Of a stretch of 64,000 nucleotides of DNA, positions 910 to 58,783 are shown piece after piece. Under the pieces are notes generated by a model, which ran no database searches, was not told the DNA's origin, and worked only from the letters and a program-made list of their open reading frames with translations. Made by a program: the position numbers and the translations under genes. Every line of letters starts with the position of its first letter. The stretch's first letter is position 1. Location: positions 62,001 to 126,000 of the IMG/VR virus record IMGVR_UViG_3300030108_006260, one strand, 5' to 3'.

Positions 910-1913
910 TCAAATCTGCACTGGGTAAGAGAAAGCATCCCATGGGATGTATAGATCATCACCAACCCTCAGGAAATCCTGGTTGGTGTACGTGGGCTGG
1001 TTTTGCCCTCGTGTAAATGAGGGAAGTTGTATTGAGCTGGGAAAAGTAGCAGTCGCTCCTTGACCTCCGTGCTGAGCCCAGAAGAGATCTTGAAGCACGC
1101 CCTTCGGGAACTTTGTAGCCGCGCCCCCCTTTGCCGCGACGATGGGGTAGCGACTCACGAGACCAAAGTCAGTCACGACGGAGAAGGGACCCACAGCGGA
1201 AGTGCCAGGCTGTGTGCCGCCCCCCGGCTCTCGGAAATAGTAGGGCTTGATGTTGTTGGTTCCTAGGAACGCTTCGGCGCCGCCGCCTTTGTCGTAGTAG
1301 CCGAGCCAATCGACCCCGCTCGACTTATCGCCGGTCCACGCTTCCATGTAGATGACAGGGTCCAAGTCTGTACCGCGCCACACGTTGAGTGGGAACATTC
1401 CGAAAATGCGGTGATTCATCGTGCTGGCTGCTGCGTAGGGCCGCGCACAGAACCCAAGAAGATGTGCTGCTGACTCGTAGCGAACCGCGCTGTCTGTCCC
1501 TTCGATATAGTCGCCTCCTGGCGCGTCGTCGCCGAAGAGAAAAAGCTGGTGTACGCCCGCCTGATCGAAGAAGTTTCCTTTCGTAGACCCGCCCGTCCCA
1601 ACGAGTTGCTGCTCTTCGGCGAGCGGAGGGCGTGTGTCTTCGGTCCCCGAAGGCACGGGAGGACTCGCAGCAAGGCGGCTGACGTATACCGCCATCGCCG
1701 CAACCGTGCTCCCTCGCTGGAACGTCAGAACGCGAATGCCGGGCGCAGGCTCCCTGATGCACTGGTAGGCGTTGTTATACNNNNNNNNNNAGATCCCGTA
1801 CCTCCTCCCGCGTAGTAGGCGGTCCACCCCAGGTTATCGATCGCGTGGCGAAAAAGGTGGTACGCGGCTTCTGCCGGGTTGCGCGCTAGTGCTGTGTTGA
1901 ACCGATAAGTCAT
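910..1913 (-). CDS. putative tail fibre/virion protein spanning an assembly gap
   Basis: ORF 1725..1913 (MTYRFNTALARN...GGGTGS) and ORF 910..1827 (...YNNAYQCIREPAPG...) are open on either side of the 10-N gap at 1781-1790. They are most simply one gene whose frame is shifted by a gap of unknown length. G/T/Y/W-rich, beta-type composition. Confidence 0.5.
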
Positions 1914-2898: not shown

Positions 2899-4083
2899 TT
2901 AGTTCTCGAAAGAAATTCCGCCGTTGAATACCTTGAATATGTCGTCTACTGCACCAGAAATGACAACAGCCCTAAGCTCGTATAGTCGTGCGTAGTTGTA
3001 TACTTCACCGTTATTTACTCCAGGAGAAGCCACAGGAGTCAAGGTTACGTCCACAACCTCAATACTTCCTCCTGATGTAACTTCTGCTGTAGCTCGAAGA
3101 ACACCTGCTCCTGAACTACCAACGGCTCCCATATCGTACAAACGAAGCTCCGCCGTAGGCGTTCCTGCGTTGATAGTAAGCATGCCCATGAGTCGAAATA
3201 GGATAGTGGAGAAAGGAAGAGTTCCGGCATTGAGGACGAGTCCGCCGACTACCGTTTCAGGATCTGCACCGGTTACCTCTGCGTTTAAAGCACCCGGTAT
3301 CTGAGGCACACCAGAGTCTAGGAAAGAACTAAGTACTGCGTTTGGGCTGGGCACCCAAGCAGTCCCGTTCCATGATAAGACATCATCAGTAGAGGGAGAA
3401 GAAGCAGAAACAGGGCTTCCCTGTAGGGCAACAACAGAAGGACTAGGGTATGTCCCAGACAAATCCCCAGAGGCAGTACCCGAAGGTGCAGTAGAGACCT
3501 GAGTAGGAGTCCACTCTGACCCGTCCCATACAAGTATGTCGTTAGTGACAGGTGTTGTAGAAGATACTGCGCTTCCCTGTAGTGCATCCACGGAAGGATT
3601 AGGGTAAGTACCCGATAAATCCCCAGAAGCAGCACCAGAAGGAGCTACAGGTGCTGGTGCCCACGCCGTACCGTTCCATACAAGGGCGTCATTAGTAGAG
3701 GGAGAAGAAGACGATACAGGATTACCCTGAAGTCCATCTACAGTAGGACTAGGATATGACCCAGCTAAATCTCCAGAAGCAGTACCAGAGGGAGGACCCC
3801 CGCTTCCTCCTCCGCCCCCTCCTCCGTTATGTCCTCCTGCCTGAGAAATCTCAGCGAGCCACTCCTGAACAAACTGCTCGTTAGTTATGCCAATGGCAGC
3901 CACCACAAAACTACGAACAGACCCTTCTAACTGTACCTCTACAGTGTGGGACTTGTCAGTTGGCCGGTTCTTTACTCCGTAGTTTATGCTACGGATGGTC
4001 TTGAGATCCGCTATTTCTAGCGTACCGATACGTGTACCATTGGGCATTGTATCAAACAATGCAAGTTGTATAGGCTGCGCCAT
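2899..4083 (-). CDS. tail fibre-like virion protein with three internal repeats
   Basis: 394 aa; Gly linker followed by three copies of PSG(T/A)ASGDL(A/S)G(S/T)YP(S/N)P(T/S)V..LQG..VS...P.T.D.L.W.G..W.P. Confidence 0.55.
   Translation of the reverse strand: MAQPIQLALFDTMPNGTRIGTLEIADLKTIRSINYGVKNRPTDKSHTVEVQLEGSVRSFVVAAIGITNEQFVQEWLAEISQAGGHNGGGGGGGSGGPPSGTASGDLAGSYPSPTVDGLQGNPVSSSSPSTNDALVWNGTAWAPAPVAPSGAASGDLSGTYPNPSVDALQGSAVSSTTPVTNDILVWDGSEWTPTQVSTAPSGTASGDLSGTYPSPSVVALQGSPVSASSPSTDDVLSWNGTAWVPSPNAVLSSFLDSGVPQIPGALNAEVTGADPETVVGGLVLNAGTLPFSTILFRLMGMLTINAGTPTAELRLYDMGAVGSSGAGVLRATAEVTSGGSIEVVDVTLTPVASPGVNNGEVYNYARLYELRAVVISGAVDDIFKVFNGGISFEN
3348..3792 (-). repeat. three ~50-codon tandem repeats within fibre-like gene
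   Basis: Repeat units are visible in the translation of 2899..4083; boundaries approximate. Confidence 0.85.
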
Positions 4084-4671: not shown

Positions 4672-4762
4672 TGGCAGAGAGTGAGGGATTCGAACCCTCG
4701 GTACCCAAAATGGGTACACTCGCTTTCCAGGCGAGCCCTTTCGACCGCTCAGGCAACTCTCT
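4672..4762 (-). tRNA. tRNA-Ser(GGA)
   Basis: Acceptor AGAGAGT/ACTCTCT, anticodon arm CTCGC-CTGGAAA-GCGAG, long variable arm, GGTTCGAATCC T-arm, encoded CCA. Confidence 0.95.
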
Positions 4763-4767
4763 ATGTG

Positions 4768-5379
4768 TTATCCCTTTACAGAGATGTTACGCAACTGCTT
4801 AGAAATACTTCTAAGATTTTTAGTGGCAGTTGCGTGAAAAGATAAGGACGAGTAGACCTTACTCAACAGGTCAAATATCTCAGAAAAAGTAGAAAATACT
4901 TTACGCTTTGCCCGCAGGGACTTCTTGTAGTAGGGGTCAACAATCCTAAGGGGGTCCCTTCGACCTGGGTCTAGTGGCTCCTCCGGAATCATCCCACCAA
5001 CAAAGGATGACAAGCTATCTACTTTACTCTTAATACGATGAACTAGGTTTGCTGTCCTCTTGGAGGATCTGGCACTTACAGGAACGCGGGAAGCCGCAGC
5101 CTTCCTGACGTCATCCATGCAGGCATCCACCCAACTACGAGTATAAGGTCCCTTGGATAGGTGAAGGTCTACCTCTGCAAGACGACATAGCTGAATAGCC
5201 CTAAAAAGAGGGTCAACAAACTTAAGTGCAAAACCCTTTGAGTTCTGAGGGGTATCTAAAGACTTAGCTAGTGAGTCCATAACTGGACTAAGAGTAGAAC
5301 ACTGACCCTCTATTGTCATAATGAGGGCTTTTGCTCTAATGTGATCAGACTGAGATACAGAAGTAGGTGATTTTGTCAT
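4768..5379 (-). CDS. hypothetical protein
   Basis: ORF 4768..5448; likely start is ATG 5379 (MTKSPT), which avoids a long overlap with the upstream gene. Confidence 0.6.
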   Translation of the reverse strand: MTKSPTSVSQSDHIRAKALIMTIEGQCSTLSPVMDSLAKSLDTPQNSKGFALKFVDPLFRAIQLCRLAEVDLHLSKGPYTRSWVDACMDDVRKAAASRVPVSARSSKRTANLVHRIKSKVDSLSSFVGGMIPEEPLDPGRRDPLRIVDPYYKKSLRAKRKVFSTFSEIFDLLSKVYSSLSFHATATKNLRSISKQLRNISVKG

Positions 5380-5383
5380 GTAC

Positions 5384-5722
5384 CTATTTGTTTTTATTGG
5401 TAAAAGCCCGTTGAAACCGGGTAGTAAGATAAAATACGCAAAAAACACCTAAGGCCATAGCATTAGCAAGACCCGTAAGGAAAAGTAAGAAACCTAGAGG
5501 GTTACCGTTCCTTATAAGTGTCGATCCAGTACTAAGAAAGAAGGAAGTAGCAGCAGTAAATAGTAAAAGCTGCAACCCTACTATAAAAATGTAGTAGAAT
5601 TTATACATACACAAGTACCTTGTGACTAGATAGGGTGACCCTAGAGAGGTTTGAACTCTCATTTCAGCCGTGAGAGGGCTGCGTCCTAGCCGGTTAGACG
5701 ATAGGGCCAGTGGTAGCTCCAC
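5384..5722 (-). CDS. small membrane protein
   Basis: Two hydrophobic helices in the C-terminal half; true start uncertain. Confidence 0.45.
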   Translation of the reverse strand: MELPLALSSNRLGRSPLTAEMRVQTSLGSPYLVTRYLCMYKFYYIFIVGLQLLLFTAATSFFLSTGSTLIRNGNPLGFLLFLTGLANAMALGVFCVFYLTTRFQRAFTNKNK

Positions 5723-5789
5723 GGAGAATCGAACTCCGCTCTCCTGTGTGAAAAACAGGTATCCTAAACCGATAGACGATGGAGCCGTA

Positions 5790-6026
5790 TCAAGTACCAG
5801 TCACAACAGCGCGAGTACTTGCTACTTTAAAGAATACAGGAAGGTCTTCCCAGGTTTCGGGCATAATATCCTGATATTCTTCCCGCTCCTTCTTAGAAGA
5901 AGCATAAACTACGATGCCAAATGGAGGAGCACCCATAGGCGAACCATAGCCAAGAGTGTTACTTTGAAGAGCCTGCTGGAAGGTGGAGCGGAAGCGCTCT
6001 ACCTTATCAAGAGTTTGCTTATCCAT
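5790..6026 (-). CDS. hypothetical protein
   Basis: 78-aa ORF in co-directional gene order. Confidence 0.55.
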   Translation of the reverse strand: MDKQTLDKVERFRSTFQQALQSNTLGYGSPMGAPPFGIVVYASSKKEREEYQDIMPETWEDLPVFFKVASTRAVVTGT

Positions 6027-6065
6027 TTACTATAAAATCCTTGGGTTGTAACTAGTGTGAACTAG

Positions 6066-6148
6066 TGGTAGGGCCGGTGGGACTCGAACCCACACGCCGT
6101 AGCACAGGAACCTAAATCCTGCGAGTCTGCCAATTTCTCCACGGCCCC
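6066..6148 (-). tRNA. tRNA-Leu(TAG)
   Basis: Anticodon arm CAGGA-TTTAGGT-TCCTG, variable arm, GGTTCGAGTCC, CCA. Confidence 0.95.
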
Positions 6149-6194
6149 AAAATAATAGTGATGTATGTTTACAGTGGCTCTCCTACTACAACGT

Positions 6195-6229
6195 AACGTA
6201 GTTCATTAACTTGAGAAGTGCAAGTACTT
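6195..6229 (-). promoter_or_regulatory. sigma70-like promoter TTGCAC-17-TACGTT preceded by AAGTAC
   Basis: -35 at 6218-6223, -10 at 6195-6200; upstream of tRNA-Leu. Confidence 0.55.
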
Positions 6230-6231
6230 TC

Positions 6232-7230
6232 TCAGTGACCAGATCCCTTTTTCTTATACATTTCAAAGTCACTTTTTCTAAGAAGTGCATCTACAGTTGT
6301 AGCCTGTGCAGGGTAGGAAGCAGATCCGATACTTACGCTCATACAGTGTTCTTCTCCTCCTACATTAAAAGGACAACTCATAGATGAGTGAATACGTTCT
6401 CGTACAGATAAAGCGTAGTCGTCTGACACAATCCCTGAAACCAAAACTATGAATTCGTCTCCGCCATACCTACACACAAAATCTTCCGAGCGAACAGCAG
6501 CACATAAGCGATCTGCTACCTCAAATAGAAGGTCATCCCCAGCGTCGTGACCCCACTCATCATTTACGGCCTTGAACTTATTTAAGTCACAAAAGAAAAT
6601 AGAAAATGGTGATTCAGATTCTATTAAAATAGACATGTGGTCAAGTAAAGCAGTCCTGTTGGCAAGTCCTGTAAGCTGGTCAAAGTAGGCCAAATGGCGA
6701 AGATTATCTTCCTTATTCTTTCGCTCCTTAAGTACTAATATTTTCTGGTATAGAATACGATACGCGTCGTAAGATTTAGGCAAGTAGCCGTGGGCGTAAG
6801 TTCTAAGCAAGCCAGTCACTAACTCCGGATCTTCTGATCCCGAGAACAGCAAAATAGCAGATTCAGGGGCTTCCTCTGCCAGTGACCTAAGTAATGGAAT
6901 ACTTATAGTGTCTAGAGCATGAATATCAGTTATTATTACGTCTACACATTCCTTATCAAGGAAATCCAGTGCAGATGAGAACGAGTGAACCGCTTTCAAA
7001 GAGTTACAAAGCGGTGAAAGATGCTCCCTAATTAGGAGAATGTCAGTAGGATCGTCTTCTATAAGTAGAACGTTAAGACTTCTTTCAGGCGTGGGAGGTA
7101 CGCTTCTGGAACAAAGATCTAGACTTACAAGAAGGTTCTTCTTTTTCTTACGCCTATAGTCGTCAGAGGATGGCAAGTGATTTATTCTCCTATCACATAT
7201 ATAGGGTGCAATTATCATAAAGTAAATCAC
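6232..7230 (-). CDS. response-regulator diguanylate cyclase (REC-GGDEF, WspR/PleD-like)
   Basis: REC: VLLIEDD, DVIITD (phosphoacceptor Asp), YLPK. GGDEF: DQLTGLANR, DLNKFKAVNDEWGHDAGD, RSED I-site five residues before RYGGDEF, SVSIG. Confidence 0.93.
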   Translation of the reverse strand: MIYFMIIAPYICDRRINHLPSSDDYRRKKKKNLLVSLDLCSRSVPPTPERSLNVLLIEDDPTDILLIREHLSPLCNSLKAVHSFSSALDFLDKECVDVIITDIHALDTISIPLLRSLAEEAPESAILLFSGSEDPELVTGLLRTYAHGYLPKSYDAYRILYQKILVLKERKNKEDNLRHLAYFDQLTGLANRTALLDHMSILIESESPFSIFFCDLNKFKAVNDEWGHDAGDDLLFEVADRLCAAVRSEDFVCRYGGDEFIVLVSGIVSDDYALSVRERIHSSMSCPFNVGGEEHCMSVSIGSASYPAQATTVDALLRKSDFEMYKKKGSGH

Positions 7231-7277
7231 TACACAAATTAGTGGCGTTGAACTGTATTTTATAGTATCCTAATTAT

Positions 7278-7880
7278 GTGAAGGTAATTAGAATAATAGT
7301 TTGGTCAGCGTTAGTTTCTTGCCTCTATTCTTGTGAGGTACCCCTTCCCACTCCGTACATTCACAGCCAGGAATACCTTCAAGTAGAGGGTTCTGAGTAT
7401 CTACAGCACCGACACCCAGAGGATTTTCCTCTGGGTGTCTTTATTTCACTACATATGCCCACTTCCTACGTTTTTTCTTCGCTAGAAGCAGTCGATAGGT
7501 GGAATGAAGCGGTAGGGTCAGATTTCCTTGACGCTCGTGTAGCGTTTATTCCACCATCAGATGGGAACGGTATTTACATTAGCTCAGAAGACCTATCGAG
7601 AGCCAGCTGGCATGTATACATGTATGGTCATGCCCAAAATGTCACAGGAAGAAGAGGGCACATTGAGCGTTCATTTATAGCTTTAAACACACGAATACCC
7701 AAGGAGATTCAGGCAACGGTAGTGATGCACGAAATAGGACACGCACTAGGATTGGCCCACGACTCTGAGCCGGGATCTATGATGTATCCAGCTATAAATC
7801 ACCTTCTATGTCAGTACTTAGAAATCAACGACGTAGAAGCAGTAAGGGGGCAACTTGAAGAAAGCGGCTATCACTTGTAG
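7278..7880 (+). CDS. matrixin-like (metzincin M10) zinc metalloprotease, probable lipoprotein
   Basis: HEIGHALGLAH zinc motif plus Met-turn SMMYP; N-terminal hydrophobic segment ending in LYSC. Confidence 0.88.
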   Translation: MKVIRIIVWSALVSCLYSCEVPLPTPYIHSQEYLQVEGSEYLQHRHPEDFPLGVFISLHMPTSYVFSSLEAVDRWNEAVGSDFLDARVAFIPPSDGNGIYISSEDLSRASWHVYMYGHAQNVTGRRGHIERSFIALNTRIPKEIQATVVMHEIGHALGLAHDSEPGSMMYPAINHLLCQYLEINDVEAVRGQLEESGYHL

Positions 7881-8469
7881 CTTACTCCTACTAGGATCGT
7901 GCCTAGCACCTAGGAGCAATGGAAACAGATACTGGAGCGAAGAAGACGCTCCCTTAGTGGTTGCCTATGATGACAACTTACCACAAGAGTACGTGGTAGG
8001 ACTCCATCAGGCCATACACCAGTGGAACATGGCCATAAACCGAAGATTACTGCGTATGGAATCAGTGGAACCGGAATCTCCCCTCGTGAACGGAGTAATA
8101 AGAGTAAGCCAAGGTACTATAGAAGTAGTCCATTTGAACCGATGGGGAAGAGTAAGAAGAATAGGCCAACACACTCCCGTTTTTGTCCACAATAGCGGAA
8201 GAATGATAAGGTCTCATATCATAATAGACACACGATATTCTGGGGGCTCCATGGCCAGAAAGATATCTGTACACGAAATAGGGCACGCCCTTGGTCTTAG
8301 ACATGACGAGTACGATCCTGGGTCTGTTATGTACCCTAGGATATCTGGTAATCAATTCATAAGAACTGATGACGTGGAGTACGTATTAGGGTATGTAGGA
8401 CAAAGTGTGCCTCAGTATAGAGAAATAAACTTTGCAACAAGAAACATCTTTAAAAGAGAGGAAGACTAG
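7855..8469 (+). CDS. matrixin-like zinc metalloprotease, probable lipoprotein
   Basis: HEIGHALGLRH plus SVMYP; MKKAAITCSLLLLGSC lipobox-like N-terminus. Confidence 0.88.
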   Translation: MKKAAITCSLLLLGSCLAPRSNGNRYWSEEDAPLVVAYDDNLPQEYVVGLHQAIHQWNMAINRRLLRMESVEPESPLVNGVIRVSQGTIEVVHLNRWGRVRRIGQHTPVFVHNSGRMIRSHIIIDTRYSGGSMARKISVHEIGHALGLRHDEYDPGSVMYPRISGNQFIRTDDVEYVLGYVGQSVPQYREINFATRNIFKREED

Positions 8470-8678
8470 TCCAGGTCGAACCAAGATCTGACCATGTCAT
8501 GCATGTCTTCTATGTAGGAAGAAAAATAATCTGCGTAGTATAGAGAGTACAAATCTTCATCTAGAGATGTGACAACGTAAAACTCTAGAGCGCCACAGTT
8601 CATCTTAAAAAGGTTCTCTGAAGCGCCCTTCTCGTCGTAGAGGTGAGTTACCAATAAAGTACCGTCTGATTCAAACAC
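8466..8678 (-). CDS. hypothetical protein
   Basis: 70-aa ORF, convergent with the matrixin pair. Confidence 0.5.
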   Translation of the reverse strand: MFESDGTLLVTHLYDEKGASENLFKMNCGALEFYVVTSLDEDLYSLYYADYFSSYIEDMHDMVRSWFDLD

Positions 8679-8861
8679 TCAGTCTTCCTTGTCTTTGTCA
8701 TCCGGAGGTATAGACTCAAAGTGATACTTTGAGCAGTTTATAACCGGGGCGTCGGGGTACTTGTCCTTTTCAGGATGAGTACAGGTTATTGTTACTTTTC
8801 CTGTTACCTGAGACACATGGACTCTTTTGTTCTTACAAGTGGCGNNNNNNNNNNAAGCCAT
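8679..8861 (-). CDS. hypothetical Cys-containing protein (spans N gap 8845-8854)
   Basis: ORF track; 5' end unreliable because of the gap. Confidence 0.4.
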   Translation of the reverse strand: MAXXXXATCKNKRVHVSQVTGKVTITCTHPEKDKYPDAPVINCSKYHFESIPPDDKDKED

Positions 8862-8917
8862 ACCGTCCTATTAGTGTCATATCTCACTCCTACAAGTAGG
8901 AATAAGATAACGGACAG

Positions 8918-9169
8918 ATGCATCATAAAAGAACTAAAGTATTATCTACTTGTATGATTTCTCCGGATGCAAAACCAGAACTAGTAAGGCTCCTAAATAC
9001 GTACCTAGAAACGAACGAGAGTGATAAAAGAGTTCGTCTCTGCAAACTAATGGGATGCAGAGACGAACTCATCACAAGGTGGGCTAAGGGGGAATCAAGA
9101 CCAGACGGTGTAAACTATAGATACCTAGTTGGAATTCTCAGAACAGAAATAGAGCGAGAAAAAGCCTAG
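8918..9169 (+). CDS. small XRE-like helix-turn-helix protein
   Basis: RLCKLMGCRDELITRWAKGESRP resembles the XRE HTH pattern (lA..lG.s...isrWE.G...P). Confidence 0.6.
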   Translation: MHHKRTKVLSTCMISPDAKPELVRLLNTYLETNESDKRVRLCKLMGCRDELITRWAKGESRPDGVNYRYLVGILRTEIEREKA

Positions 9170-9693
9170 TCCTGTTCAAGCTCTCCGTGCCAGTAAGTCC
9201 AGTTTACCCACTGCTCAGGAAGAGACATGTGAGGTTCAAGCCTAAATACTATAGCAGGAAGGTACTTGGGCTTAATTGGAACCTTTCGTAGCTTCATTCC
9301 TGCTTGTTCAGGCGTCTTACTTCCCTTGCGGTCGTTGCAAGGATAGCAACACATGACTATGTTCTCCCAGTTGGTAGCTCCTCCTCTAGAACGCGGAACT
9401 ACGTGGTCGTAGGTGAGTTTCTTAAGCGGAAGAGAATCACCACAGTACTGACATGAGTAGTCGTCCCTCAGTGCTACGTTTACCCTACTGAACCTTATGG
9501 GTCGCTTCTTCCTGCGCACTTTACGAAGTAGACGCACTACGGCAGGCATCTTGATTGTAATGGACACAGACCTAATATCCTCGTCATACTCCTCAAGGAT
9601 CTCGATCTTGTCCTCAAAAAACATGCAAATAGCCCTCTGCCAAGAAATGACGCGGTGAGGCTGGTAGGACTGATCTAATACTAAGGTACGCAT
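9166..9693 (-). CDS. HNH endonuclease (McrA-like bacterial family)
   Basis: TLVLDQSYQP N-terminus; CQYCG...TYDHVVPRSRGG...WENIVMCCYPCNDRKG. Confidence 0.92.
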   Translation of the reverse strand: MRTLVLDQSYQPHRVISWQRAICMFFEDKIEILEEYDEDIRSVSITIKMPAVVRLLRKVRRKKRPIRFSRVNVALRDDYSCQYCGDSLPLKKLTYDHVVPRSRGGATNWENIVMCCYPCNDRKGSKTPEQAGMKLRKVPIKPKYLPAIVFRLEPHMSLPEQWVNWTYWHGELEQD

Positions 9694-9723
9694 GACGCTC
9701 TCCGTTTGCTAGGGTTATTATGA

Positions 9724-11724
9724 TTATGGTTTTATTTGATGAGGAAATCCAAGGTAGTATCCTTGACCTAGAGTAACTCCTAGGCTCAGAAGAACTTTAA
9801 TGTCCTCTTCCGAGTTTACGCCTTCTGCAATGCAGTAAGCTCCTTGGGAGTCAACAGCGGCCACTAACCTAGACAACCTTTCCTTTTTCCATGGAGTAGA
9901 AGAAACATTCTCCACCCATATGCGATCTAGCTTTACAACATCAGGAGCTAGAACGATTACTGCGTTTATGGATGCATAGCCTGACCCCAAGTCATCCATG
10001 GCTAACTTTATTCCGTACTTTCGTGCTGTATTTCGTACATCGATATAGTTAGAATAACTTTCCAGAACTTGCTTCTCGCTAAGCTCAAGGCACACATTCA
10101 TACCTTCAAGAGAAGAAAGAAATTCTTCTGTAAGAGACCCGAAAGTAGCGGGGTAGAGATTCACAGAAGCATGCATAAGACCCTCTTTTTTGGCTGCCCC
10201 TATACAAGTGTCTAATGCTATCAAATCTACCTTATTCAGGATACCGGCTGAAGAAGCCGACCTGAACAGTATGTCGGGGTTGGTGAATACCTTATGACGA
10301 ACAAGATATTCTCCCCCAATAACTTCTCTCGTATTCAAATCAACAATAGGCTGTACTACTGCATAGTACAAAGAAGGGTCGAGTAGGCTCTCCTCCGTCT
10401 CAGAACCAGGGTAGTCATATGGAGTACCTATTACAACTCTATTTTTACCCGATGCCTTTGCTTTCAACAAGTGAGGAGAAGAGAGCCTGATAAGGTCATC
10501 AATACTTGTAATGTCGGGTGTAAGTTCTATAAGAGCAGCACTGGCCGTGATGGGAAGTTCGTGCTCTTCTTGCCTTATGACCTTCTCAGATAGTCTAGAG
10601 GTGAAAGCAGTACACATCAACTCTGCCTGCGCAAGATTATTGGCAAGGAACAGTACTAGGAATTCATCCCCTCCTATCCTAGAAACCCACGCAGGTCTTC
10701 CCATAACAGAACGAAGACACTCAGCTGTGTCTCGTAGAACCCTGTCACCTCCCGCTGTTCCAAGTAAATTATTAAGTTTCTTGAATCCATCCAGGTCCAG
10801 CAGCAGAGACCATCCCCTCTGTGGAGAGGCAGTAACAAGACCATGAAGCTGGTCTAAAGCGTTAGCCAGTCCTGCCCGGTTTAGGGCCTTTGTCAGGGGG
10901 TCTATGTGAACCATGTGCTCCAGCCTGGACCTCATGGATTTTATCTTTTTTAGAGAAGATTCTGCCTCACTAGCCTGGGCAGACACTCTTTGTATGTAGA
11001 ATATGGATATGCCTACAGCAATAGAAAGAGCGGAACCAAAAGAGAACAGAACAAAAACAAGACTTGTTTTAACGCCAGAGGACAGTAGAGCTATACTGAA
11101 GGCTAGAACTATGGATAGAGAGGCGAAGGGTACAATGTAATGAAATCCTTTGTACTCGTTCCTACTTCTTATCCAGTAAGACGCAGTAGAGTAAATAGAG
11201 ACCAAAAAGAAGTTAGTAGCAGTAGGCAAGGACATCTCATAGATGCCAGGCACCCAACTTCGGTCCCCTACAAGATATCCCAAAAGAGATGAAGTTGAAA
11301 TTGCTAAAACTAAAACATATGATGTGGAAGAAAAAACGAACTTCTTACTTATGCGTAAAATGTGAGCTAACCCCATAAGCACAAAGCCTACTGAGGTTAG
11401 AGGTGCTACCTTACTTCCTATGCCAGAAATATATATGAACCCATCTCCCTGTACAAGAGTATAAAACAGGGATAGAACACCTAATCCTACTGAAAGATAG
11501 GCCCCTACGTACGAGGATGGATTCCTTAAACTATAAACTAATACCAGTAATCCAATTGCAGTAACAGGGTGAGTTGTAGCACCTTGGCCAACAAATGCCA
11601 AAAGATAGCTAATACCAAACACCCACCCCAACAAGGTCCCCAAAGAGGTTAGTGCAACATACAACTGAACTACTGTGGCGACCTTACTCAGTAGATTTTC
11701 AAAATGTGTAGTCTCTTTATCCAC
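9724..11724 (-). CDS. membrane-anchored GGDEF-EAL c-di-GMP cyclase/phosphodiesterase
   Basis: About 7 TM segments; DPLTKALNR, DLDGFKKLNN, RIGGDEF; EAL domain with QPIVDL, EYLVR, SVNL, LELSE, DDLGSGY, VKLD, AEGV. Confidence 0.92.
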   Translation of the reverse strand: MDKETTHFENLLSKVATVVQLYVALTSLGTLLGWVFGISYLLAFVGQGATTHPVTAIGLLVLVYSLRNPSSYVGAYLSVGLGVLSLFYTLVQGDGFIYISGIGSKVAPLTSVGFVLMGLAHILRISKKFVFSSTSYVLVLAISTSSLLGYLVGDRSWVPGIYEMSLPTATNFFLVSIYSTASYWIRSRNEYKGFHYIVPFASLSIVLAFSIALLSSGVKTSLVFVLFSFGSALSIAVGISIFYIQRVSAQASEAESSLKKIKSMRSRLEHMVHIDPLTKALNRAGLANALDQLHGLVTASPQRGWSLLLDLDGFKKLNNLLGTAGGDRVLRDTAECLRSVMGRPAWVSRIGGDEFLVLFLANNLAQAELMCTAFTSRLSEKVIRQEEHELPITASAALIELTPDITSIDDLIRLSSPHLLKAKASGKNRVVIGTPYDYPGSETEESLLDPSLYYAVVQPIVDLNTREVIGGEYLVRHKVFTNPDILFRSASSAGILNKVDLIALDTCIGAAKKEGLMHASVNLYPATFGSLTEEFLSSLEGMNVCLELSEKQVLESYSNYIDVRNTARKYGIKLAMDDLGSGYASINAVIVLAPDVVKLDRIWVENVSSTPWKKERLSRLVAAVDSQGAYCIAEGVNSEEDIKVLLSLGVTLGQGYYLGFPHQIKP

Positions 11725-11744
11725 AAAATGAAAATAACAAATTA

Positions 11745-11981
11745 ATAGTCAAAGTATGCTGCTCTCCAACCTCCGCACAACTAGATATTTGAAAAAAGGC
11801 CTTATTCTCAAAATCTAAACTAGATCCCGCATGCACCTGCCCTACAGATGACACACCCTGCCGGATGTGCAAGTAGGGAGCCCCTCATTATTGATGGGTG
11901 GGAATCGAACCCTGAGTCCAGGGTGCAGTGGTCAGTTCGGCTAAAAACCCTGCCAAGGGCAGAGCAGCATACTTTGACTAT
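11745..11981. ncRNA. unassigned structured element closed by a perfect 21-bp inverted repeat
   Basis: ATAGTCAAAGTATGCTGCTCT (11745-11765) is the exact reverse complement of 11961-11981; internal hairpins; no ORF. Confidence 0.55.
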
Positions 11982-11998
11982 CAAAAGTTTATAAATAT

Positions 11999-12072
11999 TG
12001 GTACGGGATACTGGATTCGAACCAGTGTCTCAGCCTTGTAAGGGCCGTGCTAAACCACTCAGCTAATCCCGC
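11999..12072 (-). tRNA. tRNA-Val(TAC)
   Basis: Loop CTTACAA, T-arm GGTTCGAATCC, CCA. Confidence 0.95.
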
Positions 12073-12098
12073 TCTTGTATTTCTTCTTTTACAGAATA

Positions 12099-12173
12099 GG
12101 CGGAGGTAGAAGGGATCGAACCTACGACGACCCAGTTTCGAAGACTGGCGCTCTTCCTCTGAGCTATACCTCC
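12099..12173 (-). tRNA. tRNA-Arg(TCG)
   Basis: CCAGT-CTTCGAA-ACTGG; 3' end reads GCCT (CCA not fully encoded). Confidence 0.9.
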
Positions 12174-12176
12174 AGA

Positions 12177-12320
12177 GCTTGTTACTACGTGTTTGCGATT
12201 AGTTTAGAAGGTAGCTACTCCTTCTGCGTAAGCAACTCTACTCGCCGCTCTCGTTGAGATCCCGAGTTCCACTGTGCCTAACCATTGACTAGTATGATCG
12301 GCACGAGTGTAGTAACAAAC
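12177..12320 (-). ncRNA. unassigned multibranch RNA between the two tRNA-Arg genes
   Basis: 12-bp closing stem GTTTGTTACTAC/GTAGTAACAAGC enclosing hairpins GTGCC/GGCAC, TCTC/GAGA and AGAAGG/CCTTCT. Confidence 0.45.
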
Positions 12321-12396
12321 TGGCAGGGGTGGCAGGGATCGAACCTGCGCAAACCCAGTTTCGTAGACTGGTGCTCTTCCTCTGAGCTACACCCCT
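12321..12396 (-). tRNA. tRNA-Arg(ACG)
   Basis: CCAGT-CTACGAA-ACTGG, CCA. Confidence 0.95.
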
Positions 12397-12397
12397 G

Positions 12398-12468
12398 TGG
12401 AGTGGCGAGAAGGAATCAAACCTTCCTTAGCAGGGTTGCAACCTGCTTCGTTCTCAGAACATCACCAC
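12398..12468 (-). tRNA. tRNA-Cys(GCA), atypical D-arm and T-loop
   Basis: GCAGG-TTGCAAC-CCTGC, U73 discriminator, CCA; T-loop TTTGATT. Confidence 0.8.
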
Positions 12469-12469
12469 A

Positions 12470-12585
12470 AATCGCCACAAGTAGCACCTCCCGAGCAAGG
12501 TCCAATTCTACTTGTGACTTCCCGTCTCTCCGGGCTGTCACCTGCTTTTTCCATCCAACGGCCGCTGAGGGTTCGCGGGGATGCC
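12470..12585 (-). ncRNA. unassigned three-hairpin spacer RNA
   Basis: CATCC/GGATG + CCGC/GCGG; GTGAC-AGCCCGGAGAGACGGGAA-GTCAC; CAAGTAG/CTACTTG with inner ACCT/AGGT. Confidence 0.35.
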
Positions 12586-12660
12586 TGGAGCCCTAGCCCA
12601 GAATCGAACTGGGGTTTCATCTTTACCAAAGATGGGTACTAACCATTGTACTACTAGGGC
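12586..12660 (-). tRNA. tRNA-Thr(GGT)
   Basis: CATCT-TTGGTAA-AGATG, CCA. Confidence 0.95.
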
Positions 12661-12664
12661 TATT

Positions 12665-12750
12665 TGGCGGAAGGTTGAGGAGTCGAACCCCTACGCGTTA
12701 ACGCACCTCCGGGTTCAAACCGGATTGCCAACCACTTAGCGGAACCTTCC
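12665..12750 (-). tRNA. tRNA-Ser(TGA)
   Basis: TCCGG-TTTGAAC-CCGGA, long variable arm, CCA. Confidence 0.95.
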
Positions 12751-12751
12751 T

Positions 12752-12826
12752 TGGTGGGTCCGGAGGGACTTGAACCCTCAACCGTCAGGTTAAAAGCCTG
12801 CTGCACTACCATTGTGCTACGGACCC
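12752..12826 (-). tRNA. tRNA-Lys(TTT)
   Basis: Loop CTTTTAA, CCA. Confidence 0.95.
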
Positions 12827-12857
12827 GGTTGGGCCTTTTATAGTCGGCCAGGACTAG

Positions 12858-12930
12858 TGGAACCAGAGGGGATCGAACCCTCAGCCTCCTGCGTGCAAGG
12901 CAGGCGCTCTCCCAGTTGAGCTATGGCCCC
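12858..12930 (-). tRNA. tRNA-Ala(TGC)
   Basis: CCTGC-CTTGCAC-GCAGG, G3.U70, A73; followed by CTA rather than CCA. Confidence 0.93.
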
Positions 12931-12982
12931 TTTTTTAGAACGTATCACGTTTTCAATGAGAGTCAAGAAGATTGACTCAAAA

Positions 12983-13056
12983 TGGTACCGGGTGGGAGAA
13001 TCGAACTCCCGTATTGAGGACCAAAATCTCATGTCCTACCATTAGACGAACCCGGA
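12983..13056 (-). tRNA. tRNA-Gln(TTG)
   Basis: Loop TTTTGGT, CCA; 1:72 is a U.U mismatch. Confidence 0.92.
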
Positions 13057-13057
13057 A

Positions 13058-13144
13058 TGGCGGAAGGAACTGGAGTCGAACCAGATACCACGAGTGTACC
13101 AACGGCTTAGCAGGCCGCGCTAGTCCCAGACTAGGTTTCCTTCC
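13058..13144 (-). tRNA. tRNA-Ser(GCT)
   Basis: GCGGC-CTGCTAA-GCCGT, variable arm, CCA. Confidence 0.93.
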
Positions 13145-13147
13145 ATT

Positions 13148-13222
13148 TGGAGCGCCTGGAGGGAGTTGAACCCTCGCTTCTTGCTTGGCAAGCAAACGTG
13201 CCACCACCAACACTTCAGGCGC
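13148..13222 (-). tRNA. tRNA-Gly(GCC)
   Basis: Loop TTGCCAA, U73, CCA. Confidence 0.92.
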
Positions 13223-13226
13223 AAAA

Positions 13227-13304
13227 TGGTGGGAATGGGGAGACTCGAACTCCCTATCTCACGGGCCACAACCGTGTGCTTCGACCACTTTAGCTTCAGT
13301 CCCC
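13227..13304 (-). tRNA. tRNA-His(GTG)
   Basis: CACGG-TTGTGGC-CCGTG, extra 5' G, CCA. Confidence 0.93.
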
Positions 13305-15738: not shown

Positions 15739-16725
15739 TTAGAAAGAATCCAACTGGGACTTGAAGAAGTCGCGTCCCAAGGTCATTACTTTCTTATTTA
15801 CATCCTTGTAAGTCAATCCACTCTCTTCTAAATCTAGAGTACATTCTTTTTGAATGTCGTTTGCGAGCCACTTTAGAAAGGTTCCTGTGGAGGTGACATC
15901 CAGAGGATGCCCTTCTTCTTTTAGAAAGAAGATTCCCTGCGCAAGGCGTGCCTTACTGACTGCGTACTTTACAAAGGCATCAACCGATTCCAGTTTTTCC
16001 GGAGACATCTGTGGACCCTTCTTCCGGGGTGCCACCATCTTGTGCTTTTCCCCTTTCGACTTGAAGGGCAGCACTGGATTTCCAAAGTGCTCCCACATAG
16101 GAGTCCATACAACTCCTTCTCCGGTTCCTCTGATCCCAAAGTTTTCGCCCCAGGGGCAACAATCTTCCACATTGGCAGTAATAGACATTACTTCTTCCAT
16201 GAAGGAAGATCTGCTTTCGCTACTGCTGAAGTCGACACGGAGTGTGTACGAAGGAACAGCTAGGATAGAGTGGATCAATCCAGGAGAGGTCACGATTGCG
16301 TCAAGTGCTGGAACAGGTACGAGAGGCTGTCCCTTCTCTACCTCTGCATGAACAGAGAAAAGAACCCACTGCCGCTCGGGTAGACTGTTTACAGCTACCC
16401 CTTTCTGGATTCCAGGGCCTACCCACTCCCCAAACAGAACAATGTCAAACTCTGGGTCGATGGAAAGTTCCCGTCGAACAGAATCCTCGATCTTACGAAT
16501 CGACTTTTCGTGCTTTGATACAAAGGTAGCAAAACCAAAAGAATCGTTTCGTTCCTTTGTACGAGACTGAGGGATTAGTTCGCTAGGCGTACATCGTACT
16601 CCCGCGTTCGTACCATGAAGCTTCACTGTTCCACGGTACGTAACAACACTACGTGGTAGCTGACCAGACTTGTCTAGGTACCTAGCTACCTGATAAAAAG
16701 AATCGATTGATGGAAACTTGTGCAT
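15739..16725 (-). CDS. ATP-dependent RNA ligase (Rnl2-like nucleotidyltransferase)
   Basis: Motif I VKLHGTN, III LFGEW, IIIa VLF, IV GEGVVW, V FKSK; AGGAG SD upstream. Confidence 0.88.
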   Translation of the reverse strand: MHKFPSIDSFYQVARYLDKSGQLPRSVVTYRGTVKLHGTNAGVRCTPSELIPQSRTKERNDSFGFATFVSKHEKSIRKIEDSVRRELSIDPEFDIVLFGEWVGPGIQKGVAVNSLPERQWVLFSVHAEVEKGQPLVPVPALDAIVTSPGLIHSILAVPSYTLRVDFSSSESRSSFMEEVMSITANVEDCCPWGENFGIRGTGEGVVWTPMWEHFGNPVLPFKSKGEKHKMVAPRKKGPQMSPEKLESVDAFVKYAVSKARLAQGIFFLKEEGHPLDVTSTGTFLKWLANDIQKECTLDLEESGLTYKDVNKKVMTLGRDFFKSQLDSF

Positions 16726-17674: not shown

Positions 17675-18496
17675 CTAAAGTGCCCAAGGACCTTCTTCTG
17701 ACGTGAACCCGGCCGAGTTCCAATGACCGCCTCCTCCTAGAGATCTTGCGAGAGAAGACACATCAAAGTTAGACCCCTCTTCATCGGAACGCAAGGAGTA
17801 AACGAACAATCCGTTGTTTATCTGCCTCCAGCCTACACTGAACAGGCTGTCTTTAGCCAAGGAGTTTAGTAGCTCTGACACAGCATAGAAAGGTGCGTTC
17901 ACAACTGGGATGTCTGAGTATCCCTTGAAGGTCGAGTTAATAGCCTGTAGCTTCATCTGTTCAACGTAGGAACCCTTGGCACGGAGTATAGCCTCCCCTT
18001 CACTACAAACAACTCCTGGATTTGTAGAAAGGCGATGGTCCAAAAGGTTCCAGTTATCGAAGCTAAAGGTATAGCTGGTGACTACGGCATTGATCTCGAC
18101 CGACTTCGGCACAGAAAACCTCCACAAATCCCTATCCTCCACACAGTCAACCAAAAGAGGTCTCTTAGTGTTCGGATGGAAAAAGTCCCAAGACATTCCG
18201 GCACCCGACCTATCCATGTCGAAAAAGCAACCGGGCATACCTTCAAGGTCGTCTTTTGCAGTTAGGTGGTGGTCCAGCACTGTCAAACTTCGTGCCATGT
18301 CCGAAAGGAGCATAAGGTCGTCTCTTTTATAAGAGAAGTCAAGGATATAAACGTCCTTGTCTGTGACATCCGGAATTTCTAGGTCAGAGTAGTTAACGGA
18401 TTTGTAGTCTGCTCGGTCACCAAACTTCTTGTAAGCAGCCCACGCAGAGGTGAACCCGTCGGGACAATCCCCATGGTATAAGACTAAAGTATCCAT
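17675..18496 (-). CDS. DHH/DHHA1 phosphoesterase
   Basis: LYHGDCPDGF, ILDFS, LDHH, GGGGH..SAGF motifs. Confidence 0.9.
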   Translation of the reverse strand: MDTLVLYHGDCPDGFTSAWAAYKKFGDRADYKSVNYSDLEIPDVTDKDVYILDFSYKRDDLMLLSDMARSLTVLDHHLTAKDDLEGMPGCFFDMDRSGAGMSWDFFHPNTKRPLLVDCVEDRDLWRFSVPKSVEINAVVTSYTFSFDNWNLLDHRLSTNPGVVCSEGEAILRAKGSYVEQMKLQAINSTFKGYSDIPVVNAPFYAVSELLNSLAKDSLFSVGWRQINNGLFVYSLRSDEEGSNFDVSSLARSLGGGGHWNSAGFTSEEGPWAL

Positions 18497-19994: not shown

Positions 19995-20519
19995 CTATTT
20001 CTGAAAGCCTGTATACCGTAAGTTCTTCCTCTTTTTCCTCTTCTTGATGTCAGAAGTAATGAACCTACGTGACGACCTATTTAGGTGGTCAGTGAAAACT
20101 TTTCCGTTGAGGTGGTCCAATTCGTGTTGGAAGCACTGGGCAGATAAATCTGACAAGGACATTTCGAATTCGTTGAATTCCGTATCCTTACCTCTGACCA
20201 GGATAGAAGTATCCCGAGACACAGGTTCAGAATACCCAGGAAAAGAAAGGCATCCTTCGTCAGCCGGGGCACTCACACCAGACACACAGACGATCTCAGG
20301 ATTTAAAAATACAAGAGGACTCTCTCCCTCAGTAACATCCATGACAAAAACCCTCTTCAGGACATTTATCTGTGGTGCCGCCAAGCCAATCCCACTGTAC
20401 GCGTACATTGTTTCCAGCAGGTCGTTTACCAGGGCAGAAACGTTATCCTCCTTCTCAACAGGAAGGCACGGCTCCCTAAGAGAAGGGTGGGGGTAGACTA
20501 GTATCTCACGAATAGCCAT
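19995..20519 (-). CDS. def: peptide deformylase
   Basis: All three PDF motifs: GIGLAAPQI, EGCLS, QHELDHLNG. Confidence 0.97.
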   Translation of the reverse strand: MAIREILVYPHPSLREPCLPVEKEDNVSALVNDLLETMYAYSGIGLAAPQINVLKRVFVMDVTEGESPLVFLNPEIVCVSGVSAPADEGCLSFPGYSEPVSRDTSILVRGKDTEFNEFEMSLSDLSAQCFQHELDHLNGKVFTDHLNRSSRRFITSDIKKRKKRKNLRYTGFQK

Positions 20520-58747: not shown

Positions 58748-58783
58748 ATCCTAGCACAAGGTAGCCCTTGAAGTCAAGTACTT
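58748..58783 (-). promoter_or_regulatory. sigma70-like promoter TTGACT-18-TG-C-TAGGAT preceded by AAGTAC
   Basis: -35 at 58772-58777, -10 at 58748-58753; upstream of tRNA-Thr. Confidence 0.5.

What the first reader, a model, noticed from the sequence alone, without database searches (positions are those of the whole stretch)
6232..11724. Phage-encoded c-di-GMP circuit: REC-GGDEF cyclase plus membrane GGDEF-EAL in one island
Seen: the REC domain has its phosphoacceptor Asp and Lys, an intact GGDEF and an RxxD I-site. A second multi-TM protein has an intact GGDEF and an EAL domain retaining most catalytic motifs (EYL, N, E, DDLGSG, KLD, EG). Both flank two lipoprotein metalloproteases and an HTH. 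Known: c-di-GMP controls exopolysaccharide, motility, development and some phage receptors; LapD/LapG couples a GGDEF-EAL protein to a periplasmic protease. Inference: the phage could both raise and lower host c-di-GMP, borrowing a host kinase (none is in this window), to remodel the cell surface or block superinfection. A complete synthesis-and-degradation pair is unusual for a phage.
Basis: partly seen in the sequence, partly recalled or inferred. Interest (0 to 1): 0.75.

Follow-up and report, generated by a model that had tools for sequence, protein, structure and literature searches.

The report
Jumbo phage carries c-di-GMP enzymes
A marine jumbo phage found in many ocean metagenomes carries, deep inside its own genome, an apparently intact maker and an apparently intact breaker of the bacterial second messenger c-di-GMP, so it probably rewires its host's lifestyle signalling during infection. 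Such genes recur in other jumbo phages, so this one is not unique.

Summary
Window 6232-7230(-) encodes a REC-GGDEF protein with a complete receiver pocket, GGDEF active site and RxxD I-site. Window 9724-11724(-) encodes an ~8-TM sensor-GGDEF-EAL protein with all essential EAL residues.

The N gap (8845-8854) is an artefact. Nine independent contigs from other assemblies, plus two Logan run contigs, have the same gene order and only 3 nt (CAC) between the flanks. The gap lies in a 64-aa ORF and touches neither signalling gene.

The record is a real jumbo phage: it has RIIA, TerL, portal, tail fibre, RNR, topo II and ~38 tRNAs, and a near-identical contig reaches 340 kb. The island sits 68-74 kb inside it. 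Its read depth is even and its codon usage matches the phage.

A second strain is ~100% identical in the flanks, yet its REC-GGDEF allele has dS~1.07 and dN/dS 0.14. The gene is therefore old, exchanged by recombination and under selection.

No kinase, PilZ or c-di-GMP riboswitch was found in the 240 kb held, so inputs and targets are probably the host's.

The LapD/LapG analogy fails every feature tested. The HTH is unconfirmed. GGDEF/EAL genes occur in other complete jumbo phage genomes and in PHROGs, so I class this as a new member of a known kind. No functional study of such a phage enzyme was found.

The parts
6232..7230 (-). Orphan response-regulator diguanylate cyclase: ~47-aa disordered N-terminus, REC, long helical linker, GGDEF. 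The likely start is the ATG at 7218, giving 328 aa.
   Evidence: Pfam. Residues. AF2 model pLDDT 82.7; the best full-length structural match is DgcR 6zxb, TM 0.60/0.66. dN/dS 0.14 against the allele in L014.
7278..7880 (+). M10a: 200-aa lipoprotein consisting of a matrixin-like metzincin catalytic domain only. It is antisense to the surrounding genes.
   Evidence: Pfam M10 37.5 bits. Lipobox, HEIGHALGLAHD and SMMYP. MMP-like fold. dN/dS 0.09.
7855..8469 (+). M10b: 204-aa paralogous lipoprotein metzincin. It overlaps the end of M10a by 26 nt.
   Evidence: dN/dS 0.18.
8466..8678 (-). 70-aa ORF of unknown function, called in all related contigs.
   Evidence: No family hit.
8679..8880 (-). 64-aa ORF with four Cys (CxxC...C...C); possibly binds zinc. 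It contains the assembly gap.
   Evidence: True sequence read from L004:12845-13039. Gene called in 9 contigs.
8845..8854 (.). Spurious 10-N scaffold gap; the real content is 3 nt (CAC).
8918..9169 (+).
   Evidence: No Pfam, PHROG or NCBIfam hit.
9166..9693 (-). Free-standing HNH endonuclease.
   Evidence: Pfam HNH_5 61 bits. phrog_16726, E 4e-39.
9724..11724 (-). Membrane sensor (about 8 TM, residues 1-245), GGDEF, EAL. Predicted c-di-GMP phosphodiesterase, possibly bifunctional.
   Evidence: Pfam. Residues. TM segments. Structural neighbours of the N-terminus are membrane modules of GGDEF, histidine-kinase and SpoIIE sensors, TM up to 0.81.
4672..6148 (-). tRNA genes flanking the island on the left (Ser, Glu, Glu, Leu).
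11999..13303 (-). Array of 12 tRNA genes flanking the island on the right.

Best explanation
The stretch is an accessory signalling island that belongs to a marine jumbo phage (a near-identical contig reaches 340 kb). It sits among the phage's tRNA genes.

It encodes two enzymes of c-di-GMP turnover that look catalytically competent, each gated by its own input domain:
1. A DgcR/WspR-type Rec-GGDEF diguanylate cyclase. It would be switched on by phosphorylation of D102, from a host histidine kinase or a small phosphodonor, and limited by product binding at its RxxD I-site.
2. An ~8-TM sensor-GGDEF-EAL protein. Its EAL domain should hydrolyse c-di-GMP in response to a membrane or envelope cue. 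Its GGDEF domain may add cyclase activity or act as a GTP sensor.

The 240 kb held contain no kinase, PilZ protein or c-di-GMP riboswitch. The phage therefore most likely acts on the host's own c-di-GMP effectors (motility, adhesion, exopolysaccharide, pili) to shape the infected cell.

Shown: gene content, intact motifs, phage residence, purifying selection, recurrence in other jumbo phages.
Inferred: enzymatic activity, the inputs, the direction and timing of the change in c-di-GMP, and the benefit to the phage.

The neighbouring lipoprotein metzincins are probably a separate envelope-directed function that happens to lie in the same variable region.
For: - Domains and every key residue are present. 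The Rec-helix-GGDEF model is confident and resembles DgcR.
- The record is a phage: RIIA, TerL, portal, tail fibre, RNR, helicase, topo II, polymerase, SbcC. TerL relatives are all jumbo phages of Pseudomonadota.
- The island is contiguous in independent assemblies up to 340 kb from several Tara samples. Word depth is even at about 8-11. It is present in at least 13 metagenome runs. Its codon usage is at the 70th-80th percentile of phage genes.
- In a second strain the flanks are ~100% identical, but the REC-GGDEF allele has dS~1.07 and dN/dS 0.14, with all catalytic and receiver residues kept.
- No HisKA, only one REC, no PilZ and no riboswitch.
- Other jumbo phage genomes carry GGDEF or GGDEF-EAL genes, including a DTR-complete relative with a homologous TerL. 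A distant relative has a GAF-GGDEF with an I-site.
Against: - No activity, expression or host data. No listed RNA run holds the gene.
- The host is unknown, so it is not shown to use c-di-GMP.
- The record is only ~62% complete, so a kinase or effector could lie in the unseen part.
- The EAL motif EGVE reads EGVN. The second GGDEF domain has two non-consensus residues and no I-site, so its cyclase activity is uncertain.
- REC domains can be pseudo-receivers even when the residues are conserved.
Confidence: 0.6

Rival explanations
1. Misassembly or host contamination: the island, or one side of the N gap, is bacterial DNA joined to a phage scaffold. This would fit the IMG/VR label 'provirus'.
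For: - The record is a scaffold with four N gaps and is labelled provirus.
- Contigs of runs X6/X7 break at the gap.
- The nearest homologues are bacterial.
Against: - Nine contigs from different assemblers and samples span the gap with identical gene order and 3 nt in place of the Ns. X1 and X4 contigs bridge it.
- tRNA arrays and phage genes lie on both sides.
- Depth is even and codon usage is phage-like.
- Cellular homologues are at most 38% identical.
Confidence: 0.02
2. Counter-defence: the EAL enzyme, perhaps with the cyclase, exists to destroy or swamp cyclic-dinucleotide immune signals, for example c-di-GMP-activated STING-type CBASS effectors. It would not be there to reprogram lifestyle signalling.
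For: - Phages are known to deplete nucleotide immune signals (abstracts of PMC12657218 and PMC10312549).
- Bacterial STING effectors respond to c-di-GMP (my own knowledge, not tested here).
- The EAL catalytic set is intact.
Against: - A c-di-GMP synthase with an intact active site in the same island would trigger such a defence.
- A membrane-sensor-gated PDE is typical of housekeeping signalling proteins, not of known soluble anti-CBASS nucleases.
- No defence context and no host are known.
Confidence: 0.1
3. Non-enzymatic roles: one or both proteins act as c-di-GMP or GTP binding receptors or scaffolds, as LapD, FimX and CsrD do, or the REC is a pseudo-receiver. On this reading the island senses host c-di-GMP rather than changing it.
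For: - Many GGDEF-EAL proteins are receptors.
- The second GGDEF domain deviates at two conserved positions, and EGVE reads EGVN.
- No cognate kinase was found.
Against: Known receptor-type domains have degenerate motifs. Here GGDEF (twice), the metal and substrate residues, E472/R476/N522/E547/E550/D577/D578/K598/D600/E634/Q654 and loop 6 are all kept, and they are under purifying selection.
Confidence: 0.13
4. LapD/LapG-like circuit: c-di-GMP bound by the membrane GGDEF-EAL protein controls the neighbouring lipoprotein proteases, which then cleave surface adhesins or receptors.
For: - The genes are close together in this phage.
- A distant relative (L119) also has a DGC 1.5 kb from an M10-like lipoprotein gene.
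Against: - No LapD features: no HAMP, no periplasmic domain, and the motifs are intact rather than degenerate. The LapD model scores 48.5 bits against a cut-off of 1020.
- The proteases are metzincins, not LapG-type.
- M10 relatives lie in the same syntenic spot of other jumbo-phage contigs without any GGDEF gene.
- The complex prediction gave no answer, which counts neither way.
Confidence: 0.07
5. Neutral passenger genes picked up from a host, with no role in infection.
For: - The island lies in a variable, tRNA-rich accessory region beside an HNH endonuclease.
- The presence of GGDEF genes varies among related phages.
Against: - dS~1 with dN/dS 0.14, and every functional residue kept between alleles.
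- Codon usage is ameliorated.
- The gene is maintained in populations sampled across many stations and years.
Confidence: 0.05

Closest known systems
DgcR (Leptospira biflexa) and WspR/PleD: Rec-GGDEF response-regulator diguanylate cyclases
   Same: - A single REC with a complete phosphorylation pocket, a long helical linker, and a GGDEF with an RxxD I-site.
- The best full-length structural match is DgcR (TM 0.60/0.66).
- The GGDEF domain aligns to PleD with all active-site residues.
   Different: - Only about 25% identical. NCBIfam equivalog cut-offs are far from met: DgcR 78 vs 500, PleD 132 vs 474.
- It has an extra ~47-aa disordered N-terminus.
- It is encoded by a phage, with no kinase in the 240 kb held.
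Tandem GGDEF-EAL enzymes such as MorA (4rnh) and PA0575 (5m3c) of Pseudomonas aeruginosa
   Same: The GGDEF-EAL tandem aligns end to end (residues 267-661) with the catalytic residues of both domains conserved.
   Different: - 25-30% identity.
- The N-terminal sensor is an unclassified ~8-TM module with no Pfam family.
- No I-site. EGVE reads EGVN. ND is NN and His is Thr in the GGDEF domain.
GGDEF/EAL genes already catalogued in phages: PHROGs 5594, 11823, 14602, 22021; Bacillus phage G gp350; IMG/VR jumbo genomes
   Same: - Phage-borne GGDEF or GGDEF-EAL proteins.
- A DTR-complete 286-kb relative has GGDEF-EAL plus HDOD beside its replication genes.
   Different: - None is closely related in sequence: at most 29% over the GGDEF-EAL tandem, up to 36% where only one domain matches.
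- All are annotated 'unknown function' or by homology only.
- This phage carries both a dedicated cyclase and a PDE-type protein.
YIP peptides of Pseudomonas phages (PMC8085984)
   Same: A phage interferes with host c-di-GMP signalling.
   Different: YIPs are small peptides that bind the host cyclase YfiN. Here the phage brings its own enzymes.
LapD/LapG
   Same: A membrane GGDEF-EAL protein lies near genes for envelope proteases.
   Different: No defining LapD or LapG feature is present; see the membership test.

Membership tests
GGDEF diguanylate cyclases (PF00990 / TIGR00254) | Domain model matched above the curated cut-off | tested here: met
   135.7 and 83.6 bits against 23.8. TIGR00254: 128 and 82.8 against 37.4.
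GGDEF diguanylate cyclases (PF00990 / TIGR00254) | GG(D/E)EF active site plus metal and GTP-binding residues | tested here: met
   First protein: D215, K220, N223, D232, R254, GGDEF 256-260. Second protein: D310, K315, N318, D327, R349, GGDEF 351-355, with ND changed to NN and His to Thr323.
GGDEF diguanylate cyclases (PF00990 / TIGR00254) | RxxD inhibitory site five residues upstream of GGDEF. This is common in the family but not obligatory. | tested here: met
   RSED 247-250 in the REC-GGDEF protein. Absent (GRPA) in the GGDEF-EAL protein.
GGDEF diguanylate cyclases (PF00990 / TIGR00254) | Synthesis of c-di-GMP from GTP | not testable with these tools
   Needs an enzyme assay.
Rec-GGDEF response regulators (PleD/WspR/DgcR type) | Receiver domain with acid pocket, phosphoacceptor Asp, Ser/Thr, aromatic switch residue and Lys | tested here: met
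   Response_reg 37.2 bits against 30.2. E58, D59, D102, S130, Y149, K152.
Rec-GGDEF response regulators (PleD/WspR/DgcR type) | Rec-helical linker-GGDEF fold | tested here: met
   Model pLDDT 82.7 with helix 156-182. DgcR 6zxb TM 0.60/0.66.
Rec-GGDEF response regulators (PleD/WspR/DgcR type) | Orthology to a named member (NCBIfam equivalog cut-off) | tested here: not met
   PleD 132 vs 474; DgcR 78 vs 500. The architecture is the same, but it is not an orthologue.
Rec-GGDEF response regulators (PleD/WspR/DgcR type) | Cognate histidine kinase | tested here: inconclusive
   No HisKA in the 240 kb. The HATPase_c hits are topo II and RIIA. The record is ~62% complete and the host is unknown.
EAL c-di-GMP phosphodiesterases (PF00563) | Domain model above the cut-off | tested here: met
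   110.7 bits against 31.3.
EAL c-di-GMP phosphodiesterases (PF00563) | Catalytic signature: ExLxR, N, ExxE, DD, KxD, EGVE, QG, and loop 6 DFG(T/A)GYSS | tested here: met
   All present (E472, R476, N522, E547, E550, D577, D578, K598, D600, E634, Q654; loop DDLGSGYAS) except the last residue of EGVE, which is N637.
LapD/LapG system | LapD: HAMP plus a periplasmic output domain, and degenerate GGDEF/EAL that bind but do not turn over c-di-GMP | tested here: not met
   No HAMP or other Pfam domain in residues 1-260. About 8 TM with loops mostly under 25 aa, the longest estimated at 43 aa. Motifs intact. LapD equivalog 48.5 vs 1020.
LapD/LapG system | LapG: periplasmic Ca-dependent cysteine protease (established knowledge) | tested here: not met
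   The neighbours are zinc metzincins of the M10 type.
LapD/LapG system | Physical binding of the protease by the membrane protein | tested here: inconclusive
   The complex prediction returned 'no answer', which is not evidence either way.
Metzincin / matrixin-like peptidases (M10) | HEXXHXXGXXH zinc site, Met-turn, MMP-type fold | tested here: met
   HEIGHALGL(A/R)HD and S(M/V)MYP are invariant. Pfam M10 37.5 and 31.8 bits against 24. Foldseek top hits are MMP catalytic domains, TM about 0.5-0.6, from a model of moderate confidence.
Tailed jumbo phage | Virion and packaging genes and phage replication genes on the same molecule as the island | tested here: met
   TerL, portal, tail fibre, RIIA, RNR, helicase, topo II, polymerase, SbcC. 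TerL relatives are jumbo phages. A near-identical contig reaches 340,538 bp.

The most novel reading that the evidence does not exclude
Jumbo phages of this broad lineage repeatedly recruit sensor-gated c-di-GMP enzymes (Rec-GGDEF, GAF-GGDEF, TM-GGDEF-EAL, GGDEF-EAL+HDOD). Together with envelope-anchored mini-metzincins, these would form a phage-run 'lifestyle switch'. It would read host or environmental cues through its own sensors and flip the infected cell between attached and motile states, or strip receptors, to control dispersal and superinfection. On this reading the deep allelic divergence of the receiver domain reflects matching to different host kinases.
Probability: 0.15. Interest if true: 0.75.

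Novelty: new member of a known kind. Interest (0 to 1): 0.5.

Why it matters
c-di-GMP decides whether bacteria swim, stick, build matrix or expose pili, and these are the same traits that decide phage adsorption and spread. My searches found phage interference with this messenger documented as peptides that bind a host cyclase. Phage-borne GGDEF/EAL genes exist in databases, but I found no functional study of one.

This is a clean and widespread natural case: the phage occurs in many ocean samples, the gene set is intact, and selection on it is measurable. It also carries both a synthase and a hydrolase, each with its own sensor. That makes it a good candidate for asking experimentally what a virus gains by controlling this messenger.

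It also shows that the 'provirus' label and the N gaps of the record are not grounds for dismissing the genes.

Tried and rejected
- blastn of the island against the phage collection: no match.
- Peptide-pattern scans of IMG/VR with single proteins: nothing. Only the alignment-based scan worked.
- Promoter/terminator scan of the island: counts no higher than in shuffles, so it was not used. Repeats: nothing structural except a 24-nt inverted repeat upstream of the GGDEF-EAL gene.
- Complex prediction of the TM module with M10a: 'no answer', not used as evidence.
- Pfam, PHROG and NCBIfam searches for the 83-aa 'HTH', the 70-aa and 64-aa ORFs, and the 8-TM module: no family.
- RNA runs: none was listed as holding the gene, so there is no expression evidence.
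- Host identification was not achieved. TerL relatives infect Pseudomonadota, but at only 27-32% identity. The closest cellular homologues of the enzymes are at most 38% identical and taxonomically scattered.
- I considered a strict DGC-metzincin functional linkage after finding L119. I rejected it as a rule because syntenic relatives L120/L121 and others lack a GGDEF gene.
- I considered a DHH-type pGpG hydrolase at 17675-18496. The hits are weak (Pfam E 0.028, PDB E 3e-4 over 76 aa), so this remains a lead only.

Full report
**1. What is there**

The region 6232-11724 holds eight ORFs:
- a REC-GGDEF protein, 6232-7230(-);
- two overlapping M10-type peptidase genes on the opposite strand, 7278-7880(+) and 7855-8469(+);
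- a 70-aa ORF and a small ORF on the minus strand, the latter interrupted by the N gap;
- an 83-aa plus-strand ORF, 8918-9169;
- an HNH endonuclease, 9166-9693(-);
- a 666-aa membrane GGDEF-EAL protein, 9724-11724(-).

Pfam matches are far above the curated cut-offs. tRNA genes flank the island on both sides: four on the left and an array of twelve on the right. The window has 27 tRNA genes in all.

**2. The gap**

The identical GGDEF-EAL protein is encoded on 19 contigs in public assemblies, the longest 340,538, 283,391 and 214,918 bp. They come from several Tara Oceans samples and from different assemblers.

Nine of the fetched loci contain both flanks of the gap. In every one the flanks are separated by just CAC, and the gene order across the gap is the same. 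These loci are 99.9% identical to the window over about 20 kb. Logan contigs of two runs bridge the gap with 7 letters left out, whereas contigs of X6/X7 stop on either side of it.

The gap is therefore a scaffolding artefact. It lies in a 64-aa, four-Cys ORF and affects neither signalling gene.

**3. Is it phage DNA?**

The window is bases 62,001-126,000 of a 240,443-bp IMG/VR record labelled 'provirus', with a CheckV completeness of 62%.

The record encodes RIIA, a large terminase and a portal (both long, with endonuclease-like inserts), a tail-fibre protein, ribonucleotide reductase, a helicase, both topoisomerase II subunits, a DNA polymerase and an SbcC-like nuclease. Nearly all of these are on one strand. 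All 98 phage records matching its TerL are jumbo or near-jumbo phages. All listed hosts are Pseudomonadota (PaBG, Erwinia, Xanthomonas, Burkholderia, Vibrio, Rhizobium phages), at 27-32% identity.

The island lies 68-74 kb into the record, between RIIA and the replication genes. Word depth is even across the island and its flanks. The two signalling genes sit at the 70th-80th percentile of phage genes for codon-usage similarity to the genome. The sequence is held by at least 13 marine metagenome runs from several studies. Host contamination or a chimeric join is effectively excluded.

**4. Are the proteins intact?**

I aligned them to PleD and to MorA/PA0575 and to 17-18 homologues each, and read the residues directly.

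REC-GGDEF protein:
- It has the full receiver set: E58, D59, D102, S130, Y149, K152.
- It has the GGDEF active site with its metal and substrate residues.
- It has an RSED I-site at the canonical spacing.
- Its AF2 model is confident (pLDDT 82.7), with a long linker helix at 156-182. DgcR, the small prototypic Rec-GGDEF cyclase, is the best full-length structural match.

Second protein:
- It keeps GGDEF but lacks RxxD, and it has two non-consensus residues in the GGDEF domain.
- Its EAL domain keeps every residue that is invariant in the alignment, plus a consensus-like loop 6. The only deviation is Asn for the last Glu of EGVE.
- Its N-terminal 245 residues form about eight TM helices. Most loops are under 25 aa, and the longest estimated loop is 43 aa (154-196). 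No Pfam family matches. Predicted-structure neighbours are the membrane modules of other GGDEF, histidine-kinase and SpoIIE sensors.

The two GGDEF domains are only 30% identical to each other, so they are not a recent duplication. No NCBIfam equivalog cut-off is met for any named enzyme or for LapD.

**5. Evidence of function from population data**

A second strain (L014-L016) is 99-100% identical to the window over the flanking kilobases. It drops to 66-85% nucleotide identity across the REC-GGDEF gene, and is intermediate over the metzincin genes.

Nei-Gojobori estimates for REC-GGDEF are dS 1.07, dN 0.15 and dN/dS 0.14. By domain, dN/dS is 0.11 for REC and 0.12 for GGDEF. The metzincins give 0.09 and 0.18. 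All functional residues are retained in both alleles.

This is the signature of an old gene under constraint whose alleles are shuffled by recombination. It is not the signature of a recent passenger. The strain-level heterogeneity probably explains why several assemblies break near 8.7-8.85 kb.

**6. What else the phage brings**

The 240 kb contain:
- no HisKA domain (the HATPase_c hits are topo II and RIIA);
- only this one receiver domain;
- no PilZ domain;
- no Rfam family other than tRNA, hence no c-di-GMP riboswitch.

Inputs and outputs are therefore most likely the host's. The caveat is that about a third of the genome is not in the record.

**7. The proteases and the LapD/LapG idea**

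The two proteases are tandem paralogues. Both have a lipobox, HEIGHALGLxHD and a Met-turn and an MMP-like predicted fold.

A profile search finds 237 relatives at E of 1e-10 or better, mostly proteins of about 200 aa. The contexts I sampled look like phage DNA, and the metzincin gene is antisense to its neighbours in all of them.

One distant relative is L119, which shares a 54%-identical neighbour gene with our phage. It has a GAF-GGDEF cyclase with an I-site 1.5 kb from its metzincin. However, the syntenic contigs L120/L121 and others have no GGDEF gene there.

With no LapD or LapG feature present, I treat the proteases as a separate envelope-directed function and not as part of a c-di-GMP-gated proteolytic switch. 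The complex prediction gave no answer.

**8. How unusual is it?**

- PHROGs already contains several GGDEF families, a GGDEF-EAL family, an EAL family and a REC family, all labelled 'unknown function'.
- In the GenBank phage set most GGDEF/EAL hits come from poorly curated or contaminated records. Bacillus phage G gp350 and a few others are genuine.
- An alignment-based scan of IMG/VR gave at least 478 GGDEF-type matches. Many are at contig ends, but several lie inside records over 200 kb.
- Two of those records have direct terminal repeats and 100% estimated completeness. One of them (286 kb) has a TerL homologous to ours and a GGDEF-EAL gene followed by an HDOD gene, next to a helicase and topo II. 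Another record (224 kb) has four GGDEF domains.
- Full-text searches found no functional study of a phage-encoded cyclase or phosphodiesterase. The documented mechanism is phage peptides that bind the host cyclase YfiN.

**9. Verdict**

The most likely function is direct manipulation of host c-di-GMP by two sensor-gated enzymes. The direction, timing and benefit are inferred, not shown.

This is a new, well-supported member of a known but functionally unexplored kind. I rate it of moderate interest.

Noticed in passing
window 4672-58576; also L017, L019, L020 (G000 3.6-58 kb): The phage carries about 38 tRNA genes. 27 are in the window and the rest lie upstream. All are on the minus strand and they cover most amino acids.
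   Followed up: partly
window 6232-8700 versus L014: Strain-level mosaic. The flanks are ~100% identical, but the REC-GGDEF gene is 66-85% identical and the metzincins 88-100%. Several assemblies break near 8.7-8.85 kb, probably because both alleles coexist in the samples.
   Followed up: yes
window 58783-59409 (-): A third M10-like metzincin (208 aa; HEMYHALGLDHD, SAMYP). It has an N-terminal membrane anchor instead of a lipobox and lies beside the topoisomerase genes.
   Followed up: partly
L116-L124 (contexts of M10 relatives): In every sampled contig the small metzincin gene is antisense to an otherwise one-directional run of small phage ORFs. It is often next to a SIMPL-domain gene and a PTH2 gene.
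   Followed up: partly
window 1781-1790: A second 10-N gap. Related contigs carry about 53 nt there (L004 19927 to 19981), so its stated length is also wrong.
   Followed up: partly
window 17675-18496 (-): A 273-aa protein, 54% identical to one in the distant relative L119. Its C-terminus is weakly DHHA1/DHH-like (Pfam E 0.028; PDB 9r7o E 3e-4). A DHH-type phosphoesterase could in principle degrade pGpG, but this is only a lead.
   Followed up: partly
G000 213.9-224.9 kb, 123.9-128.0 kb; window 43952-45820: TerL (1098 aa), portal (1237 aa) and DNA polymerase (1382 aa) are unusually long. At least TerL and portal show endonuclease-like inserts. Several free-standing HNH or homing endonucleases are scattered through the genome.
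   Followed up: no
window 11742-11765 and 11961-11984: A 24-nt inverted repeat (96% complementary, arms 195 nt apart) between the start of the GGDEF-EAL gene and tRNA-Val. Contigs also map there in both orientations.
   Followed up: no
window 2899-4083 (-): A 394-aa protein with a poly-Gly tract and three copies of a ~45-aa repeat (SGDL(S/A)G(T/S)YP.P.V..LQG). It looks like a fibre or receptor-binding protein.
   Followed up: no
window 19995-20519 (-) and 15739-16725 (-): The phage encodes a peptide deformylase and an RNA ligase close to the island (Pfam labels on the identical genes in L004).
   Followed up: no
whole record G000: The IMG/VR 'provirus' label looks doubtful. I saw no host-like genes among the large ORFs of the record, and near-identical contigs reach 340 kb with the same content. 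The record is more likely a fragment of a ~340-390 kb virulent-type jumbo phage.
   Followed up: partly
L099 (IMG/VR 286-kb DTR genome), 5812-8059: Another jumbo phage has a soluble GGDEF-EAL gene directly followed by an HDOD-domain gene. This is a different c-di-GMP-related pairing from the one here.
   Followed up: partly
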